Positions 9,705 to 17,919 of a stretch of DNA of 64,000 nucleotides are shown here, in pieces; the stretch's first letter is position 1; each line of letters begins with the position of its first letter. The stretch spans positions 495,828-559,827 of the forward strand of contig NW_005434649.1 in NCBI RefSeq assembly GCF_000315625.1, written 5' to 3'. The translations under genes and the position numbers were made by a program. This DNA is from Guillardia theta CCMP2712 (Eukaryota > Protista > Cryptophyta). The notes beneath the pieces were generated by a model. The model worked only from the letters and a program-made list of their open reading frames with translations, was not told where the DNA came from and ran no database searches.

Positions 9705-10962
9705 CTTACAGGATTGTTTCTCGTGCAAGAGTGACAAACGTCCTGTCAACGAAGATCAGAGTCGATCTAGCGATACAGCAGATATTGTGCCCAAAAGGTG
9801 AGATATACACGCAAGCGATGATTGTCACAGAGCAAGCTTTGTTGCCTTTTGTGTTTCCGAAATTGCACAAGGAACAAGAACGTTCAAGACACACGAAGAG
9901 AAGAAGAAACCATTGCAGCAAAGACGCTCACGAACATACTGATGAGCAATGTAAGATACCATGAAAGAACAAAGGAACTAGAGCAATCGAGCATAAAATA
10001 TTCAGGCAAAGCAGTTTCCCCCAAATATTCTGAAATTCTGCGACAAATGCCAAAGTTGACCAGGAGAACAATGTGAAGGCGGCAAGTAATCACAAGATTT
10101 CATCATCATCTTCAATGCCAACCATCAATCAGCCCAAGAATCAAACAGATCGCAAACAAGTTCAGCATGAAGGCAAGTCAATCAACCCAAACCAAACACT
10201 AATACTCAAGCCGAGGCAAGGGGACCAACAAGAGCCCCTGCAGCAGTGAAGCAGTGAATGAGGGCAGGGACTGTGACAGAAAGTGATTATTCATGCATGG
10301 AAGGTGGTAGGGAGAGGAGGGAGAGGAGCGAAACGGGTCCATGTGCTATTTCATATCGCCCTGCCCAGCATGCCGCGCAGAGCCGCGGGAGGCCGCCTCA
10401 AAGGGATTTTTAGAACAGTACCGGAGCAACTTTTAGTGAAAAAGTCAAGTACCATATATTTTAATTATAAAATAATTGCCAGAACAAATAACACTATCTA
10501 CCAGTATCTGTACCTTGGGTAGGATATTTCGTGAATCATTCCAGAAATATGACCTGAAATTGCAAGTTTCTTGAGACAAATTCAGACTTGGTGAAATATG
10601 AACCAATGTAAAGTTGTAGAATCAGCCGCAAGCCTTCCCATTCCGATACAAAATAATATATTTTTAATTTAATAAATCTGAATTACAACCAAACAGTAGA
10701 AATTTAGAAATAGAATTTGTACCCATTACCGTGTATTAAAATAATGTAATAAAGAAGCACTTCCCTCCCCAGGATAATAATCTAAATCTTTAGTCAATAT
10801 GGAATCGTGGAATGAACCTTTATAGTCAACAATTGACTACGATCGTGCTCCCCGATTTGACGAAAGAATGGCGGCGCTGCGTGGGGTTGGCTGAGGCGGC
10901 GAATGCTGGCGGCGGTAGAGGAGAGACATTGAGAGCAGGAGGTCAAGAGAGATCTTGCAGTG

Positions 10963-13816
10963 ATGAAGCTTCACTGGCAATGCTGGTCGTTGTTGCTGGC
11001 CTGTCTGTGCTTTTGCAGCGGAAAGGAGAGCAGATTTCTACCGAAAGGTCCGTCAAAGCTGCAAGCAAAGCTGACGAGCGCAAGATGGATGAAGGACAGA
11101 GTGACGAAGCCCAGCCTGGAGAATGTAAATCAGAACCAGAAGCAGCTTGCGCACCTCGTTAGCAGAGGTGTTGCCCACCACTCATTTTATCCTCAAGCCA
11201 CCTGCGTTTCCGTGTTGTGCCTCTGAATTGTTGATACTTTTCTTGAGCCATTGCTCTCGAGAGCTTAATGGGATCAGCACTCTTCTGACTATCTTGAAGG
11301 TCTCCAGCATCGAGGACCTCAGCTGATCAGGCCTCCTGGCAACATGCCGGCTCTTGTCTGCCAGAGGGTGAATGGTGTGGATGGCAAGTGGGGTCTTCTG
11401 TGTAAACCACTTCCTCCGACAAACACGTCAGGTGGACCACCTCGAATCCCTCTCTCTCTCTCTCCCCACCCACCTTCCCATCCCGTTTGCCCTCCCTGCT
11501 CCCCTCTCCCCTCTTACTCTTTCCGTTCCTGCCTCCAACCCTCTCATGAAATCTCCCCCCTCCCCCTAGCTCTTGTTCTCCCCCTGCAACCACCCGCTTC
11601 TCTGTCCGTATGTCCTCTTTCCTCCCTCCACCAGCTTCTGTCATGATGGAGCTCTCGAGCAGATGAGAACTCTACGGACATCCGGGCAGCACAGAAGATC
11701 GCAGACGAGCTAGCCCGTCAGGTGCGTCCCGTCCTCCGACGTCGAGCCCGCGCAGCTTCAGCTCGTTGAGAGTTCACAGGCGGCCGTGTTGAAGCCTACC
11801 AGGGCGAGGCATCTTCATCTGACTCCTGCTGTCTATCAGTGGCAGGCAACTCCACAGTTGCTCCCTTGCTGCACCTTCCGCTGATCCTCGTGGGCAGGCG
11901 AGCTCCACCTTTACCTACATCAAGAAGTGACAGCTCTGCTCGCTCGCTCTCTTCCTCGTCCTCACTTGTAAGACGCAGCAAGAAGCACTTCTACAATGTG
12001 CACTATGCGGACTCGTCAGCTCTTAAGATCAAGACAGGATTGGATGTGGTTGAGCTCGGTAGGGATCCCTTCCTTGTTGGATCTCAAGTGACTCCATGGG
12101 TCCAGGCCCTTACCGTTTCTTCTCAAGATTCGGCCTAATCGAGGAAGCAGTCTCAGGAAGACCAGGTTTGACTGCTCCAAGGGCAGGAGAGAGCTCATGT
12201 TCTCCTTCTCCCTTGTGTCTTTGCAGGAGCCGACTTGCAAGGAGCGGACGGGATTCTTGGGTTCGGCTACACAGACCTCCCACGAAGCGCGTCCTTGTGA
12301 GATCCGTGCATGGAGGGTGAAGATGTTCACTCATCTGCCTTGCTCCGCAGGATGAAGACGATCACGCGTAGAAGAAGGCCGAGCTGGAACGTAACTCAGG
12401 TTCAACTCGTCGTTGGGCTTCAGTCTCTTCCACTCGCTCATCTGGTGTGCAATGCAGCCGGCTTCATTCCCGATTCTCCGTCACAACATTTTTTCGGTTC
12501 TTTCATCAAGCACTGCGGGAGAGCTCCAGGTCCGAAGGAGTTGATCCAGTCAGCGATGTTGACCTTGTGTGTACAGCTCGGTGGGTACGACAGTCGGTCG
12601 TATGAGGGCGACATCATGGTGATGGAAGCTTGCGAGACGCTGCGATGCTTCTGAGACCTTCGTCAGTGGACGAAGATGGTCAACCTGACGGGTTACGGTG
12701 TGAAGATAGTCTCAGTTCAGTATGCGGGAAGGTTGATCCTCCAGGAAATGTTCCTTCCGATACTCACTGCAATGGTTTACCTTCAGGGAGCTGCTCGAGC
12801 TAGGACCCAAAGGGAGGCACTTCGGCGGGATCCTCGGAGTGTTCGACACAGGAAGGTGAGGGTTGCTCTTGTGTGGACCGGAGGCCCGGCCACCCTCGAG
12901 ACAAGTTGAAACTCGTTCAACAGCACATGTCTAGAAATGCCCCGCGGTCTCTTCCAAGGGTACTACATGTCCAGGTGGGACTGACGGCACAGAGAGCACA
13001 ACAACCCTGATTGTTCCTTAGCTTGTTCGACAACTTTGCGAGTCTCGCCTCCGGCAACCCGACGTTGCCCATCATTGTGTGGAGCGGACCAAAGTGGGAG
13101 AAGGAGGTGACGGTGGGTTCAGGTGGTGCTGGATGGAGGGGTCAAATTGGAGATCCCGCAGGTCTGCGCGCGAGGGAGTTGGGAGGTTGGTTGAAAAGTG
13201 CGACCAGAATGTATGGAGCGAACCGTGGGGATGTACGAACCCATTTGAATCGGACAACCTGATGCTGTTTGGTCATCATGTCTTCAGAGCGTACATGGTA
13301 AACTTGCAAGTCTCTGTCAATGACCTCGATCCTGTCCTTTGAAGTCGTCCCACTGACCCTCCTCGCCGTCGTGCTTGTTCTCTCCCTCTCCCTCCTTCTC
13401 CTCCTCCTCGCCGTTATCCTTCCTATCTTCAGCAAGAAAATCTGTACCATCATCGTCGACCTCCTGCTATCCTTCTGTCACTTGTTCTCATCTTCGTTCA
13501 GGTCATTCACTCCATGGTCCCTCCTCACTACAAGATGGGCTTTGCCAAGATTGCTAAGGTGCCATAGTGGTCGACACATGTCTGTAGCTAACATGTTCTC
13601 AGGATTACCTGCCTCTTATAGGCAAGCAGAAGAGTCGAAACGTTGATGACAACGATCCGGCCAAGGTTGTCTCCTTTCTGATTCAGTGATTGCCTTGTTG
13701 GCTCTGAGACGGCTGAGTCGCATGTTTCAGATCCCTCTCTCCCTCGAAACGCGAGTTCATTTGTTCATCACAATCAATATTGGAACCCCCCCACAGGTTC
13801 CTGTCGAAATCTTGAC

Positions 13817-13883
<67 letters not shown>

Positions 13884-13884
13884 C

Positions 13885-13923
<39 letters not shown>

Positions 13924-14162
13924 GGAGGAGGAGGAGGAGGAGGAGGATGAAAAGTGACGGACTGTAATCCATAGTGTTTGACAGGCTTTTCGCTGTGTGT
14001 TTGATACTGGATCCATTCTCCTCGCAGTTTTCAGCGGCAACGTAACATCAGGTATCTCAGTCGTGTTTTTTAATGTGAACAACTCTCATGGTAGTTCAAA
14101 CAGCAATGACGGTGCAGTATGAAGCGAAGATAGCAAAGAGGGCAGCACTTGCTCGGATGTAA
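10963..14162 (+). CDS. Secreted pepsin-like (A1) aspartic protease, apparently circularly permuted, multi-exon
   Basis: Signal peptide MKLHWQCWSLLLACLCFCSG. Spliced motifs in order: SSTF...FYNVHYADSS, DGILGFG, LGGYDSRSYEGDI/W, GVFDTGS/TCLEMP, LFGHHVFRAYM, KMGFA, then IPL...ITINIGTPPQ/AFRCVFDTGSILLAV. Putative TAA at 14160-14162. Confidence 0.8.
13820..13946 (+). repeat. (GAT)n followed by (GAG)n microsatellite inside an intron of the protease gene
   Basis: About 34 GAT units then about 8 GAG units, lying between the GTPPQ donor and the AFRCVFDTGS acceptor. Confidence 0.95.
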
Positions 14163-14804
14163 CCCTTGTGCCTGCCCAGACTTTGTCACCCTCACCTCTC
14201 CGCAGAACTGCTCGTAAGGAGCTGGCAAAAGCTGCAGCAGGTCCTGGTTCTACTCCTCTACATCTTGATAGCTGAGTCGCAATGTCAGGACTAAACAAAG
14301 ACAGCTCCAGGACAAGTCGGCTCGTTCTCATCGGGGGGATCGGGATACTTACTCTGGGTATGTCGAAACGTTGCCCCGAGAGTCACGAGCCATCGGTTGA
14401 CCTGCATTGCAGGATTGATGTACATCATGAGGTTGTTGTTCAACAGATTTCGGCGCCGGCCGATGATACGATCGGTCGCGTCGAAGATCTGAAAGTCTCG
14501 TTGCGCCGCTGGCCCCTCCTTCCTCTCTAGTTCATCTGTTTCTCCATGTTTTCTGCCTTCAGCTCCGCTCGCTTGCTCGTCTCCCGGCCCGCGGCGCAGA
14601 TTTTCTGCACGGCATCAATCTTCTTAACGAGAACCACAACCAAAAACGCGATGCTGGTCTAATTGAAGTTTATTGTTTAGCCCTCGGAAAGTATGTACAT
14701 TCAGCCTGATCATTCTAAATGAACATGTTCTAATCTCTATGTACAATCAACATCATGTTTCACACAAGCTCATCACCACGTCGCTGCAACTGTTCTCCTG
14801 CTAG

Positions 14805-15251
14805 TCAGCAGTTCACTTCTTCAGGCCGTTCTTGCTTCTCCATCACTTCGACTGCTATGTTGTTCATCGGAAACATAACTGTCGCCCCGGCAGGCCCACA
14901 AGCATCCAGCAGATGCGAAGGAGGTTCAAGATCATCGCAAATCAGATGTTCCTCACTCACGGAGTGCAATTCCATTTTCTTCATCTCCTTCTCGAGTACA
15001 ACCGACGGGGCAGATGTCATAAGTGCGGCAGAGGTGTGGAACGATGCGTCTATGTGACTTGTTGCAAGAGGAACCTGAACAGCGAACGAGGAATCCTGCG
15101 CGTGTTCACCCGACAATGAAGAATGGCCAATGCTGGCAGCTTGTTGTGCATGCTGCCTTTCCTTTATGCAGAATCCGACTAGTGCGCAAGTTCCATGAGA
15201 GCAAGTGGGCCCGGATTTCTTGGGTCGTTGGAAAGAGCACATCCCGATCAC
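14805..15251 (-). CDS. Hypothetical protein (possible exon)
   Basis: 148-aa ORF with protein-like composition; no recognisable domain. Confidence 0.3.
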   Translation of the reverse strand: MIGMCSFQRPKKSGPTCSHGTCALVGFCIKERQHAQQAASIGHSSLSGEHAQDSSFAVQVPLATSHIDASFHTSAALMTSAPSVVLEKEMKKMELHSVSEEHLICDDLEPPSHLLDACGPAGATVMFPMNNIAVEVMEKQERPEEVNC

Positions 15252-17919
15252 AGCAAATCAAGGAGAATAAACTGTGCTAATAAAAACGATGAGAAGGGCG
15301 GTGCCGCTAGTGCAAGCCAAGGATCGGTTTTCAGCTCGTGAGGGCGAGAAGACAAGGAATTAAGGTGCGATGCGGGCGATGAAGAAGACGGGGGAGGCGG
15401 AAAAGACTAGCAGAGATGAAGAATGGCGAAGGGGAGCACCACCAGGATAGTCGACAACGAGGACAAGGAGAGGAAAGGCAGGGGTCACGGGGGGCGGGGG
15501 GGGCGAGGATGCGAGGATCGGAGGGCGAAGAACTGAGTTATAACAGAGAAAACTGCCTGAGGATAGGAAGGTATAAAGAAAGTGCCGGGGGTACTCAATT
15601 GGGGGTACCTGGTAATTACAGGGTGGTGTTCCAGAAGGGGTCCATAAAAGGACCCCATCTCTTTGCCCACTTCCAAAAAATTGCTCCCCTGAATCTGAAT
15701 GGTGGGTCCCTATGGATGATGATGGGGTGTAAAAGCAATTTTGTGATTATGCACCGGTATATTTGTATGCATTCTCCACGGTCCTTTGTACCATTGCAGG
15801 TAGGGGTCCTGGGGCATCCCAAACTTTGGGGGTAGGGTCATTTCATTTCGCAATGAGTGACTTGCGGAAAGGAAAGGTTGAATGGAAATGGGGTGGGACT
15901 ATTGTTTGGGAGTAGGGCATTCTTTTGACTAGGGTAGGGGTGGGGGTAGCTCAAGTTGGTGGGATCCATGGGTGAGAACGTGTACCACCCCAACTTGAAC
16001 GCCAGGGTAGAAACAGGTTACACACAGGGGTGACAGCAGGTTTACTTGATCGCCAACGGAAGGCATTCAGATATTCACTGAAAACTACGAAAATGTTAAA
16101 ACTATTTGTTGTTAAAGTGTTCATATTAACTCGTAATATTTGAATTATATTTCATATTTTCAGGTATATGATTCGGTGGCGGGCCATCTGAATTTCCACG
16201 GTTTGTGTCGGACCGGTCACGAGGTACCTCGCTAGTCTCGTTGCGATCTGACTTGAAAACGATACTTTTCGAGTAAGTTACTCCTTCTTTACTACATCTG
16301 TTGTGACCGGGCAGGGAAGTCATCCAGGGCGTTGAGAGGAAGGGGGGTGGTAGCCCCCAGAAAAGTTGTGGCTGGTACTGTTGTACCCTATGAAAGTTTA
16401 GTCAATTACACCAGTCTGACCTCAAAGATAAAGATAAGTAAAACTAGAAAGGGAGATTGTGGTACGATTTGAGTAGTAAGTAACGATTCATTGGTACCTT
16501 ACAATGGTGGAGGGTGGTGTGAACAAATATTTCCTCAGCACCGTGTATCTGGTGTCAGCACCAAGTTCATAATCGGGAAGGTTAAGCCTAGCAACTAGCA
16601 GGTATATTCTATTCAATCCGAGATTTTTTGTGTGCTCTAATTTCTCCGAAGCGATATCTAATTCATCAGTCCCCTTACGGTATTGCCATAGTCAAAATAT
16701 ACTTGATCCCACTCAATCAAATGCCTCTCTCTGCTACGGTTCCAAGGTCACTCATTTAAGATACAGGAACCATCAAGATCATTCGTCATCCATGTTCACG
16801 GCTTTCACTCCGAAAGAAATGCACCCCCACCCCCTGAATTACCTCCAAGTACCGTGCCATAATGCGCGTGCCGTAAAAGAACCCTGGCAAATCCCTGCGG
16901 AGCAGGCCGGGCCGACGGGTGGTACGGAGGTGACGGCTGTTCTCCGAGTCTGTGACAGTACCCCGCCCTTCTACCCTGGAGTTTCTTCGATTGGGCCCTC
17001 TAGCTCAAACCGTTTGACTCAGCGAATGGTCCTCTCCGAGGCTCTACCTGCGCCTGGCGTGTGACTCCGATGCAGTCACAGACCTGACGGCGTGACTGCC
17101 AGCTGCTCGAGATCATCCCCACAACCCTCCCAGTGCTGGCGAGCTCTGGAATCAGGGGGTACTTGCTCACAACTCAGCCTCCTCTGCCCCCCACCCTCGC
17201 GTGCCGCAGTGCACAGCGGCCGCAACTTCGCTACGTCACGTAGTAGAGGCAGTATGCCATGATGACTGAGGCTAATGCTGAGCCGCTGACTCTGTGACCC
17301 GGACCGGCGGCAGTCACCCGGCGTTCAGCCCGGCCGCCGGTACCCGGTCAGGTCTCGCCAGCGGCCCGGCCGGCCGTGGCACGTCGGAGTACGGTCCGAC
17401 CGTCGGACTGGTCTACGGCCTACCGTTGACCGCAAGTTAGTTGTCTGTCAGTGATCAAGTTCTCGGACCGCTGCCACCGACCCGGGAGTGCTCCAAGTCA
17501 CATTCCTGTCTCAGTTACTGCGGCGGCGGCCGGGCGGCCCCAGAAAACCGTACGGCGCCGGCGGCCGCCGGCGCTGGGCAGACAGGCTGCGGCCGCCCAT
17601 CATGGACACCACTGAGCGGGACCGGCGGCGGCATGGAACAGGACTCCTCTCCGTTCGGTCTTTCTCTGTCAGAGAGGGCTGAGTCCTGTTCGATATCAGC
17701 CAAGTGAATGATATGAGGAAAAATCTAGCCTGCGGGAAACAAGGAAAGGATGCAAGTGCCCGGCAAACAGTGCCAAAATGAGGCTAGAAAGAAAGTTCTG
17801 GACTGGAGGGAATATGAAGTTCGCATGCAGCACCATGCAGGTACACGTGGTCGATGTCAAGACTTGCTTGTCTTGCTTGTCATGACGGCTTGTCACGGCG
17901 ACCCTGCCAAAACTGAGCT

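What the first reader, a model, noticed from the sequence alone, without database searches (positions are those of the whole stretch)
10963..14162. Circularly permuted pepsin-family aspartic protease
Known: A1 proteases run IGTPPQ-F-FDTGS (Asp32) -> SSTY -> flap Tyr -> GILGL -> LGG.D -> DTGT (Asp215) -> ILGDVF.R -> IGFA end. Seen, splicing by eye with ~50-nt introns: after the signal peptide and a pro-like region with no DTG, the fold starts at YQWQASSTF...FYNVHYADSS (~11830-12020). It continues DGILGFG (~12250), LGGYD (~12580), VFDTGS (GAC at 12845), LFGHHVFRAYM (~13265-13297) and KMGFAK (~13535). A ~20-aa linker follows, and only then IPL...ITINIGTPPQ (~13730-13796) / AFRCVFDTGSILLAV (GAT at 14003), with a stop about 30 codons later. 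Both catalytic Asp motifs are present once each but in swapped order, and the exon phases are compatible. Inference: a natural circular permutation, for example by duplication and trimming, which would need a different zymogen/propeptide mechanism. I am not aware of this arrangement being described.
Basis: partly seen in the sequence, partly recalled or inferred. Interest (0 to 1): 0.85.

Follow-up and report, generated by a model that had tools for sequence, protein, structure and literature searches.

The report
Circularly permuted membrane-anchored pepsin-like protease
This Guillardia theta gene encodes a pepsin-family protease in which the first ~45 residues of the fold, including one of the two catalytic aspartates, sit at the end of the chain next to a membrane anchor; this rearrangement is shared by apparently all such proteases of cryptophyte algae and I found no published description of it.

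Summary
Transcript contigs from two studies, and two public ORFs identical to my splice (P0171, P0123), define a 25-exon, 574-aa gene (window 10963-14492, + strand).

The order along the protein is:
- signal peptide, then a poorly conserved N region (aa 21-145);
- pepsin core, equivalent to pepsin residues ~51-326, carrying D330 (Asp215-type);
- a 21-aa linker;
- the pepsin N-terminal strands with IGTPPQ and FDTGS, carrying D480 (Asp32-type);
- a stalk helix, a transmembrane (TM) helix and a basic tail.

Pfam, PDB sequences and an HMM I built from canonical A1 proteases all place profile positions ~1-45 after positions ~45-310. AlphaFold folds the C-terminal segment confidently. A two-chain test docks it on the core (0.84 against 0.01 for the best control), with D480/T481 touching T331.

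The arrangement is family-wide. At least 18 of 21 other A1 loci in this genome, many of them single ORFs, are permuted and none is canonical. All 83 classifiable homologues from Guillardia, Hanusia, Rhodomonas, Hemiselmis, Baffinella and metagenomes are permuted. Both Asp motifs are invariant in 104 sequences.

No paper describing this was found. The scan had already flagged paralogues in this genome (s1-431599, s1-430603). Enzyme activity, the zymogen mechanism and the evolutionary origin remain inferred.

The parts
10863..10962 (+). 5' UTR of the transcript (the contig starts at 10863 in X2 and 10879 in X1); in-frame TGA at 10930-10932
10963..14492 (+). Complete CDS of 25 exons and 574 aa. 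Exons: 10963-11167, 11300-11431, 11663-11721, 11780-11845, 11898-11926, 11979-12058, 12106-12165, 12227-12296, 12351-12399, 12458-12529, 12577-12618, 12667-12731, 12787-12855, 12924-12974, 13022-13076, 13123-13161, 13208-13297, 13502-13558, 13603-13665, 13731-13796, 13985-14051, 14104-14158, 14206-14240, 14289-14357, 14413-14492
   Evidence: Joints; reconstruction; identical to P0171
10963..11022 (+). Signal-peptide-like N-terminus (aa 1-20: MKLH, then a hydrophobic run, then CSG)
   Evidence: Sequence; helix 3-15 in the model; inferred, no dedicated predictor was run
11023..11818 (+). N region, aa 21-145, with no A1 similarity. It is mostly low-confidence or disordered. Orthologues conserve a Cys-x-Cys hairpin motif (MPALVC..LLCKP, aa 84-107) and a helix at aa 116-135
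   Evidence: No Pfam hit; pLDDT below 50 for aa 16-111; orthologue alignment
11819..13558 (+). Pepsin core, aa 146-430, equivalent to pepsin residues ~51-326. It includes SSTF, the flap, DGILGFG, LGGYD, the Asp215-type DTGS, FGHHVF and MGFAK
   Evidence: VIA-align Z 21, rmsd 2.4 A, model 146-429 to pepsin 51-326; Pfam and HMM hits
12004..12006 (+). Tyr173, the flap tyrosine (equivalent to pepsin Tyr75)
   Evidence: HMM alignment, canonical 'aieYg' to 'NVHYA'
12845..12847 (+). Asp330 codon (GAC), the C-lobe catalytic Asp (equivalent to pepsin Asp215), in VFDTGST
   Evidence: invariant in 104 homologues
13603..13665 (+). Linker exon, aa 431-451, joining the old C-terminus (MGFAK) to the old N-terminus (IPL)
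   Evidence: predicted coil with pLDDT ~73-77
13731..14051 (+). Relocated N-terminal strands of the pepsin fold, aa 452-496 (equivalent to pepsin ~1-45), on two exons (13731-13796 and 13985-14051): IPLSLE, INIGTPPQ, FDTGS, ILLAV
   Evidence: Pfam Asp positions 3-35, E 2.2e-6; canonical HMM positions 45-98, iE 5e-11; strands with pLDDT 84-96; docks on the core at 0.84 against 0.01
14003..14005 (+). Asp480 codon (GAT), the N-lobe catalytic Asp (equivalent to pepsin Asp32)
   Evidence: F479-D480-T481-G482-S483 invariant in 104 homologues
13797..13984 (+). Intron 20, holding a long (GAT)n/(GAG)n microsatellite. DNA contigs of run X12 break here
14104..14240 (+). Stalk helix, aa ~495-526, on two exons
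   Evidence: Model helix 495-526
14289..14492 (+). TM helix (aa ~533-562, LVLIGGIGILTLGLMYIM..), a basic cytosolic tail, and the stop codon at 14490-14492
   Evidence: Hydrophobicity scan; model helix 533-562; 35 of 37 full-length relatives have a C-terminal TM

Best explanation
The gene encodes a type I membrane-anchored pepsin-family (A1) aspartic endopeptidase whose bilobal fold is circularly permuted.

After the signal peptide and a variable N region, the chain enters the fold at about pepsin residue 46-51 (VYQWQASSTF). It runs through the flap (Tyr173), the rest of the N lobe and the whole C lobe with Asp330 (Asp215-type), to the old C-terminal strand (MGFAK). A 21-residue linker then leads into the old N-terminal strands (IPL.., IGTPPQ, FDTGS with Asp480 as the Asp32-type residue, ILLAV).

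These strands insert back into the N lobe. There they pair with I220-L221-G222 and put D480-T481 against D330-T331, a fireman's-grip geometry. The chain leaves the fold at about pepsin residue 45 into a stalk helix, a TM helix and a short basic tail.

The catalytic domain would therefore face the lumen or the outside, held to the membrane through the very hairpin that carries one catalytic Asp.

Shown here: the gene model, the order of the parts, conservation of the motifs, and the predicted packing. Inferred: that it is an active, pepstatin-type acid protease; the membrane topology; and that the permutation arose once in an ancestor of cryptophytes.
For: **Gene model**
- Transcript joints and a spanning contig.
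- A translation identical to P0171 and P0123.

**Order of the parts**
- Pfam Asp HMM positions 44-217 lie at P0123 residues 108-301, and HMM positions 3-35 at 421-453.
- PDB sequence matches give the same swapped order.
- My canonical A1 HMM gives two domains on the native protein: HMM 110-282 at aa 150-340 and HMM 45-98 at aa 440-493. It gives a single 79.6-bit domain once the segment is moved to the front in silico.

**Fold**
- The AF2 core has pLDDT mostly above 90. The C-terminal segment forms four strands with pLDDT 84-96.
- VIA-align places model 146-429 on pepsin 51-326 with Z 21, rmsd 2.4 A and ~245 residues aligned.

**Packing**
- Core 146-432 plus segment 446-497 scores 0.84, against 0.01 for the best of 3 controls.
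- That mark was reached by 51 of 78 solved complexes and by 2 of 108 mismatched pairs.
- The runs agree in at least 88% of their contacts, and the partner's pLDDT is at least 78.
- The lowest-error contacts are 219-222 with 477-480 and 331 with 479-481.

**Selection**
- D218-G-I-x-G-F-G, D330, G332, G469, P471, Q473 and F479-D-T-G-S483 are invariant in 104 homologues.
- Orthologues at 57-88% identity keep the whole architecture.

**Family**
- 83 of 83 classifiable homologues are permuted.
- At least 18 of 21 other loci in the genome are permuted and none is canonical. Several are single ORFs.
- 35 of 37 full-length members have a C-terminal TM.
Against: - No biochemical data exist for any member.
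- I could not obtain model coordinates. No permutation-aware superposition (CE-CP or TM-align -cp) and no Asp-Asp distance was computed, so the packing rests on pLDDT and on the contact list of a separate predictor.
- That predictor may be reproducing the pepsin fold from memory. A pass shows likeness to pepsin, not stability of this protein.
- Gly76 of the flap is Ala here, and the C-lobe motif is DTGST rather than DTGTS. Effects on activity are unknown.
- The raw RNA run X16 covered only the 3' end of the gene, so the splice evidence comes from assembled contigs.
- DNA contigs of X12 do not bridge 13793-14066.
Confidence: 0.82

Rival explanations
1. The fold is permuted, but the protein is a non-catalytic pseudo-protease or binding protein, as xylanase inhibitors and other inactive A1 homologues are.
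For: - Activity is untested.
- The flap has Ala where pepsin has Gly76.
- Some paralogues (L003, L007, L015) do have altered motifs.
Against: - Both D-T-G-S motifs, the flap Tyr and the hydrophobic-hydrophobic-Gly partners are intact in this gene.
- The Asp motifs are invariant across 104 homologues. Known inactive A1 homologues have lost such residues (established knowledge of TAXI-type proteins).
Confidence: 0.1
2. The C-terminal Asp32 segment complements the core of a second molecule, giving a strand-swapped dimer on the membrane, rather than folding back on its own chain.
For: - The linker is short in this gene (21 aa).
- The two-chain docking test shows the segment can bind as a separate chain.
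- Retropepsins assemble their active site from two chains (established knowledge).
Against: - AF2 closes the fold within a single chain, with linker pLDDT ~73-77.
- Linker length varies from 24 to 161 residues in the family without loss of the architecture.
Confidence: 0.06
3. The 3' IGTPPQ/DTGS exons are the stump of a second, truncated A1 domain that is not part of the first fold, leaving a one-Asp protein.
For: This is the expected appearance of a decayed tandem duplicate. The NCBI model GUITHDRAFT_137397 lacks these exons.
Against: - The segment ends at the same point in all relatives and is followed by the TM anchor.
- It is the most conserved stretch outside the core.
- It has high pLDDT and a specific predicted interface with the core.
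- The core itself lacks exactly these residues: pepsin 1-50 is unmatched.
Confidence: 0.02
4. Artefact: a scaffold misassembly or a chimeric transcript created the swapped order.
For: - DNA contigs of one run break at the microsatellite between exons 20 and 21.
- The X2 contig also runs on into the neighbouring gene.
Against: - Two transcriptome assemblies from different studies agree, as do two public ORFs.
- Orthologues in other species have the same order.
- Intronless paralogues carry the same order within one ORF.
Confidence: 0.01

Closest known systems
Canonical pepsin-family (MEROPS A1, Pfam PF00026) proteases such as pepsin, cathepsin D and renin
   Same: - The same bilobal fold: Z 21 to pepsin over residues 51-326.
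- Two D-T/S-G motifs, the flap Tyr, and psi-loop partners (ILG, and FG in the C lobe).
- A predicted fireman's-grip contact between the two motifs.
   Different: - The chain order is rotated. Pepsin residues ~1-45, with Asp32, come after residue 326 instead of before residue 46.
- There is no N-terminal propeptide next to the mature N-terminal strand. That strand is reached from the old C-terminus through a linker.
BACE1/BACE2 (memapsins) and plasmepsin V: type I membrane-anchored A1 proteases
   Same: - Signal peptide, lumenal A1 domain, a single C-terminal TM helix and a short tail.
- BACE2 is the best PDB sequence match, and plasmepsin V and X are among the top structural matches.
   Different: - In BACE and plasmepsin V the TM follows the C lobe (pepsin ~326). 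Here it follows the N-lobe hairpin (pepsin ~45), so the domain must sit differently on the membrane.
- Those enzymes are collinear with pepsin.
Swaposin, the plant-specific insert of phytepsins
   Same: A natural circular permutation associated with A1 proteases. It was the first gene-level case described (PMC3320104).
   Different: There the permuted unit is the inserted saposin-like domain, not the protease fold. The phytepsin catalytic domain is collinear with pepsin.
Type III metacaspases of algae with secondary plastids, including Guillardia theta
   Same: A protease family in the same organism whose two catalytic-domain pieces are in swapped order (p10 before p20). The authors discuss it as circular permutation (PMC3734836).
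   Different: It is an unrelated cysteine-protease fold. That case swaps two sub-domains, whereas here a 45-residue strand unit inside one lobe is relocated.

Membership tests
Peptidase family A1 (pepsin family; Pfam PF00026 Asp) | Significant match to the family profile | tested here: met
   P0123 against PF00026: E 3.3e-20, 73 bits (cut-off 19.9). The C-terminal piece scanned alone: E 2.2e-6, 27.8 bits
Peptidase family A1 (pepsin family; Pfam PF00026 Asp) | Two catalytic Asp residues, each in a hydrophobic-hydrophobic-D-T/S-G-S/T motif | tested here: met
   VFD330TGST and VFD480TGSI. Both Asp motifs are invariant in 104 homologues
Peptidase family A1 (pepsin family; Pfam PF00026 Asp) | Bilobal pepsin fold with the two Asp loops apposed | tested here: met
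   - AF2 model plus VIA-align: Z 21, rmsd 2.4 A to pepsin 51-326.
- Predicted contacts T331 with D480/T481.
- This is prediction only; no coordinates or experiment were available
Peptidase family A1 (pepsin family; Pfam PF00026 Asp) | Flap tyrosine (pepsin Tyr75) | tested here: met
   Tyr173 aligns to the flap Tyr of the canonical HMM. The neighbouring Gly76 is Ala
Peptidase family A1 (pepsin family; Pfam PF00026 Asp) | Collinear order: propeptide, Asp32 motif, flap, Asp215 motif, C-terminal strand | tested here: not met
   HMM positions 1-45 lie C-terminal to positions 45-310 in this protein and in all relatives examined
Peptidase family A1 (pepsin family; Pfam PF00026 Asp) | Pepstatin-sensitive endopeptidase activity at acid pH | not testable with these tools
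   Needs expression and an assay
Natural circular permutant (the definition in PMC3320104) | Same fold as a reference family, old termini joined by a linker, new termini opened elsewhere | tested here: met
   - The old C-terminus (MGFAK, aa 423-427) is joined by aa 431-451 to the old N-terminus (IPL, aa 452).
- The new ends lie at pepsin ~46-51 and ~45.
- An in-silico un-permuted sequence gives one continuous HMM domain
Natural circular permutant, origin by duplication and trimming | Remnants of the duplicate or intermediate forms (tandem or partly trimmed) | tested here: not met
   - The N region against the C-terminal segment scores 18, against a shuffle mean of 19.7.
- The linker against canonical propeptide profiles is not significant: hhalign P 0.21.
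- No tandem form was seen among 170 proteins.
- Absence of remnants does not exclude this origin
Membrane-anchored A1 proteases (BACE / plasmepsin V type) | Single C-terminal TM helix after the catalytic domain | tested here: met
   - The best 19-residue hydrophobic window (Kyte-Doolittle mean 1.94) starts at aa 536.
- The model has a helix at 533-562.
- 35 of 37 full-length relatives have one.
- The anchor is attached at a different point of the fold than in BACE

The most novel reading that the evidence does not exclude
A single ancient circular permutation replaced the canonical pepsin topology in the whole A1 repertoire of cryptophytes; no canonical A1 gene was detected in G. theta. It tied the Asp32 hairpin directly to a membrane anchor. 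Because the mature N-terminal strand is now internal, these enzymes would be regulated in a way no known A1 zymogen is. For example, the internal linker or the new N region could act as the inhibitory segment, or cleavage in the linker could yield a two-chain enzyme.
Probability: 0.4. Interest if true: 0.88.

Novelty: new variant of a known kind. Interest (0 to 1): 0.8.

Why it matters
**A new topology for a classic fold.** The pepsin fold is one of the most studied enzyme folds, and its evolution (duplication of a retropepsin-like half, N-terminal propeptide zymogens) is textbook material. I could find no paper describing a natural, conserved and expanded family in which the fold is circularly permuted.

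**A natural experiment.** The family shows that the psi-loop strand carrying Asp32 can be supplied from the C-terminus. It raises a testable question about how an A1 protease is kept inactive without an N-terminal propeptide next to its first strand. It also gives protein engineers a validated break point (pepsin ~45/46) and natural linker solutions.

**Practical consequences for annotation.**
- Domain tools report a truncated Asp domain (HMM ~41-309).
- The NCBI gene model for this locus drops the Asp32 exons and the TM.
- Such proteins can therefore be mistaken for one-Asp pseudo-proteases.

Tried and rejected
1. **Exon-by-exon Pfam scan of raw ORF pieces.** No A1 hits; the exons are too short.
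2. **Aligning exon translations to paralogue scaffolds to build a search profile.** MAFFT scattered the fragments. The alignment (A1) was not used.
3. **The N region (aa 100-155) as a decayed copy of the Asp32 strands.** I suspected this from 'AAVLKPTRARHLHL' and a phase-0 intron after Gln in both places. Rejected: the local alignment score is 18 against a shuffle mean of 19.7, and there is no HMM hit.
4. **The linker as a relic of the canonical propeptide.** HMM alignments of some paralogues run into propeptide positions 15-57. The best hhalign match is the expected first pro-strand, but it is not significant (P 0.21). Unproven.
5. **Feature search of the protein atlas (protein-atlas search) and shape search of the ESM Atlas.** Only canonical A1 clusters were returned, and no permuted cluster outside this family. 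This is uninformative about distribution.
6. **Foldseek against the PDB.** Top hits are pepsin and BACE, but with TM only 0.5-0.64 by target. This is expected for a sequential aligner on a permutant, and no aligned ranges were given.
7. **Raw RNA run X16.** Almost no reads fell on the gene body, so it gave no independent junction support.
8. **Phmmer with exon 1 against 1.84 billion representatives.** Its only use was to retrieve P0123.
Full report
**Source and gene model**

The genome is Guillardia theta CCMP2712, named by the sources of the homologues. It is 87.1 Mb in 669 contigs, and the window is C25:495828-559827.

Laying public runs on 10700-14800 showed assembled transcript contigs from two different studies (X1, 2014; X2, 2018). 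They skip short GT..AG segments all along the region. One X2 contig of 2848 nt covers 10863 to beyond 14800.

From the 15 listed joints, the listed exon pieces and the bin depths, I rebuilt the remaining joints. The result is 25 exons and 24 introns. Twenty-three introns are GT-AG and one is GC-AG (11846-11897). Twenty are 44-68 nt and four are 132-231 nt.

The model predicts the contig coordinate at 14800 exactly (2133). It gives an uninterrupted 574-codon ORF from ATG 10963 to TGA 14490-14492, and an in-frame TGA lies at 10930-10932 upstream.

A phmmer search with exon 1 retrieved P0123. P0123 equals residues 43-574 of my translation. Its cluster also holds the MMETSP 'complete' ORF P0171, which is identical over all 574 residues.

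The NCBI model GUITHDRAFT_137397 (P0125, 464 aa) retains introns and loses the last exons.

**Checking the observation**

The one error is the stop 'about 30 codons later'. The transcript splices at 14051/14104 and 14158/14206 and goes on to encode a helix, a transmembrane segment and a basic tail.

**Order of the parts**

- On P0123, Pfam Asp matches HMM positions 44-217 at residues 108-301. Scanned alone, residues 421-453 match HMM positions 3-35 (E 2.2e-6). TAXi_N positions 2-25 match the same place.
- Against PDB sequences, BACE2 residues 117-241 align to query 176-303 and residues 16-42 to query 421-447. Pepsin 1am5 residues 13-51 align to query 419-458.
- I built an HMM from 31 canonical A1 proteins returned. 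On the native protein it gives two domains: HMM 110-282 at aa 150-340 and HMM 45-98 at aa 440-493.
- Moving residues 431-500 in front of residues 133-430 in silico gives one continuous domain of 79.6 bits.
- In that alignment, canonical '..plsny..YfGeisiGtPPqeFkvvFDtGssnLWvPs' pairs with 'IPLSLETRVHLFITINIGTPPQAFRCVFDTGSILLAVFS', and canonical 'kydssksst' pairs with 'VYQWQASST'.
- The break is therefore in the loop after the LWV strand (pepsin ~45/46). The old termini are joined by residues 431-451.

**Structure**

AlphaFold2 was run with a 104-sequence alignment of permuted relatives (A2), giving mean pLDDT 76.

- The core, residues 146-430, is mostly above 90.
- Residues 451-490 have pLDDT 84-96 and form four strands (450-456, 462-468, 473-480, 486-489). 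This pattern is expected for pepsin residues 1-40.
- Residues 16-111 are below 50.
- A helix at 495-526 and a hydrophobic helix at 533-562 follow.

VIA-align puts model 146-429 on pepsin 51-326 (Z 21, rmsd 2.4 A, ~245 residues). It gives similar values for BACE1, cathepsin D, chymosin and plasmepsins V and X. The first 50 residues of pepsin are left without a partner in every sequential alignment.

I had no access to coordinates, so I tested the packing another way. I gave the core (146-432) and the segment (446-497) as two chains to complex prediction.

- The score was 0.84, against 0.01 for the best of 3 controls.
- That mark was reached by 51 of 78 solved complexes and by 2 of 108 mismatched pairs.
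- The runs agree in at least 88% of their contacts, and the partner's pLDDT is at least 78.
- The lowest-error contacts are 219-222 (G-I-L-G) with 477-480, and T331 with 479-481.
- From established knowledge of pepsin, these correspond to the N-lobe psi structure (Asp32 strand against Ile120-Gly122) and the Thr33/Thr216 fireman's grip.
- The tool warns that a pass may come from memory of solved folds. Here that is the point being tested: likeness to pepsin.

**The family**

A search of the organism's own genome with PF00026 found 29 matches. Wherever two pieces lie in one open frame, HMM positions ~40-310 come first and positions 1-34 come downstream.

Three such loci are single ORFs of 563, 593 and 708 aa. 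Each reads SSTF .. DGILG .. LGGYD .. DSGTS .. GDVFFR .. linker .. GTPxQ .. FDTGS .. TM.

With nine more loci fetched, HMM and motif scans show at least 18 of 21 other loci permuted, none canonical, and three undetermined: L007, L016 and L017.

Of 120 database homologues of one paralogue, 83 could be classified by motif order and all 83 are permuted. The same rule correctly calls the cathepsin D and pepsin proteins canonical.

Named sources are Guillardia, Hanusia, Rhodomonas, Hemiselmis and Baffinella. All are cryptophytes; the remaining hits are unnamed metagenome or transcriptome proteins.

The window's protein is a divergent member. It is ~25-33% identical to the other subfamilies and collinear with them from residue ~136-150 to ~490-496. 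Its own orthologues, at 57-88% identity, keep every part.

In the 104-sequence alignment the invariant columns include D218-G-I-x-G-F-G, D330, G332, C335, C390, G469, P471, Q473 and F479-D-T-G-S483. Thirty-five of 37 full-length members have a C-terminal hydrophobic helix.

**Mechanism proposed**

The protein is a lumen- or surface-facing, membrane-tethered acid endopeptidase that uses D330 and D480. The Asp32 hairpin is supplied from the C-terminal end of the ectodomain and is directly followed by the stalk and the anchor. Activity, topology and localisation are inferred.

In canonical A1 zymogens, the propeptide sits immediately before the first mature strand and replaces it in the inter-lobe sheet (established knowledge). 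Here that strand is internal, so the usual mechanism cannot apply unchanged.

Candidate inhibitory elements are the new N region and the linker. In orthologues the N region conserves a Cys-containing hairpin and a helix at aa 116-135. The linker has a conserved PL.G plus basic motif. I could not test either candidate.

**Origin**

Permutation by duplication (PMC3320104) is the obvious model, but I found no remnant of a duplicate. The N region does not resemble the relocated segment. The similarity of the linker to canonical propeptides is not significant. All members share one break point, which suggests a single event before the cryptophyte radiation.

**Literature**

Nine full-text searches combined circular permutation or permuted with pepsin, pepsin-like, or aspartic protease, proteinase or peptidase, or with Guillardia or cryptophyte. 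They found only three related items:

- the swaposin insert of plant A1 proteases (PMC3320104, PMC8683733);
- the permuted type III metacaspases of algae, including G. theta (PMC3734836);
- a 2026 survey of permutations that does not mention pepsin (PMC13552848).

Subscription-only papers are outside this library.

**Verdict**

The observation and the interpretation are both right, apart from the 3' end. The feature is not a one-off. It is a member of a conserved, expanded family of circularly permuted, membrane-anchored A1 proteases that seems to be undescribed. First-stage notes on other pieces of this genome (s1-431599, s1-430603) flagged paralogues of the same kind.

Noticed in passing
window 13808-13957 (inside intron 13797-13984): A long (GAT)n microsatellite that passes into (GAG)n. 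It reads as poly-Asp/poly-Glu or poly-Met in open frames, but it is intronic. DNA contigs of run X12 stop on both sides of it (13792 / 14067).
   Followed up: partly
window 11846-11897: A GC-AG intron; the other 23 introns of the gene are GT-AG. The joint is ambiguous by 7 bases (GGCAGGC repeated at both ends).
   Followed up: yes
window 11432-11662: A 231-nt, strongly CT-rich, low-complexity intron (GC skew about -0.45). A separate low-depth X1 contig (11402-11689) retains it.
   Followed up: no
window 10963-14492 compared with the NCBI protein P0125: The public NCBI model GUITHDRAFT_137397 (464 aa) skips exon 4, reads through introns and ends before the Asp32 segment and the TM. The annotated protein therefore looks like a one-Asp A1 fragment.
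   Followed up: yes
window ~14654-15300, minus strand: A convergent neighbouring gene. Raw RNA reads with leading T-runs mark its poly(A) site at ~14654-14655. The X2 transcript contig runs across both genes, so the 3' UTRs abut or overlap.
   Followed up: no
window 10400-10800: An AT-rich stretch (GC ~0.32, against ~0.5 around it) just upstream of the transcript start. It is probably the intergenic or promoter region.
   Followed up: no
L003 (G000:C111), L007 (G000:C56), L015 (G000:C226): Paralogues of the permuted family in which the relocated segment lacks a recognisable DTG (L003, L015) or was not found at all (L007), and in L015 the C-lobe DTG motif is also missing. These are possible pseudo-proteases within the family.
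   Followed up: partly
L001 (G000:C15), 708-aa ORF: A paralogue with a very long Gln/Pro-rich linker of ~180 residues between the old C-terminus and the relocated Asp32 segment. This shows that linker length is almost unconstrained.
   Followed up: no
L004 (G000:C40), ORF residues ~40-60: A run of about 20 Gly residues in the N region of a paralogue. The N regions of the family are variable and of low complexity.
   Followed up: no
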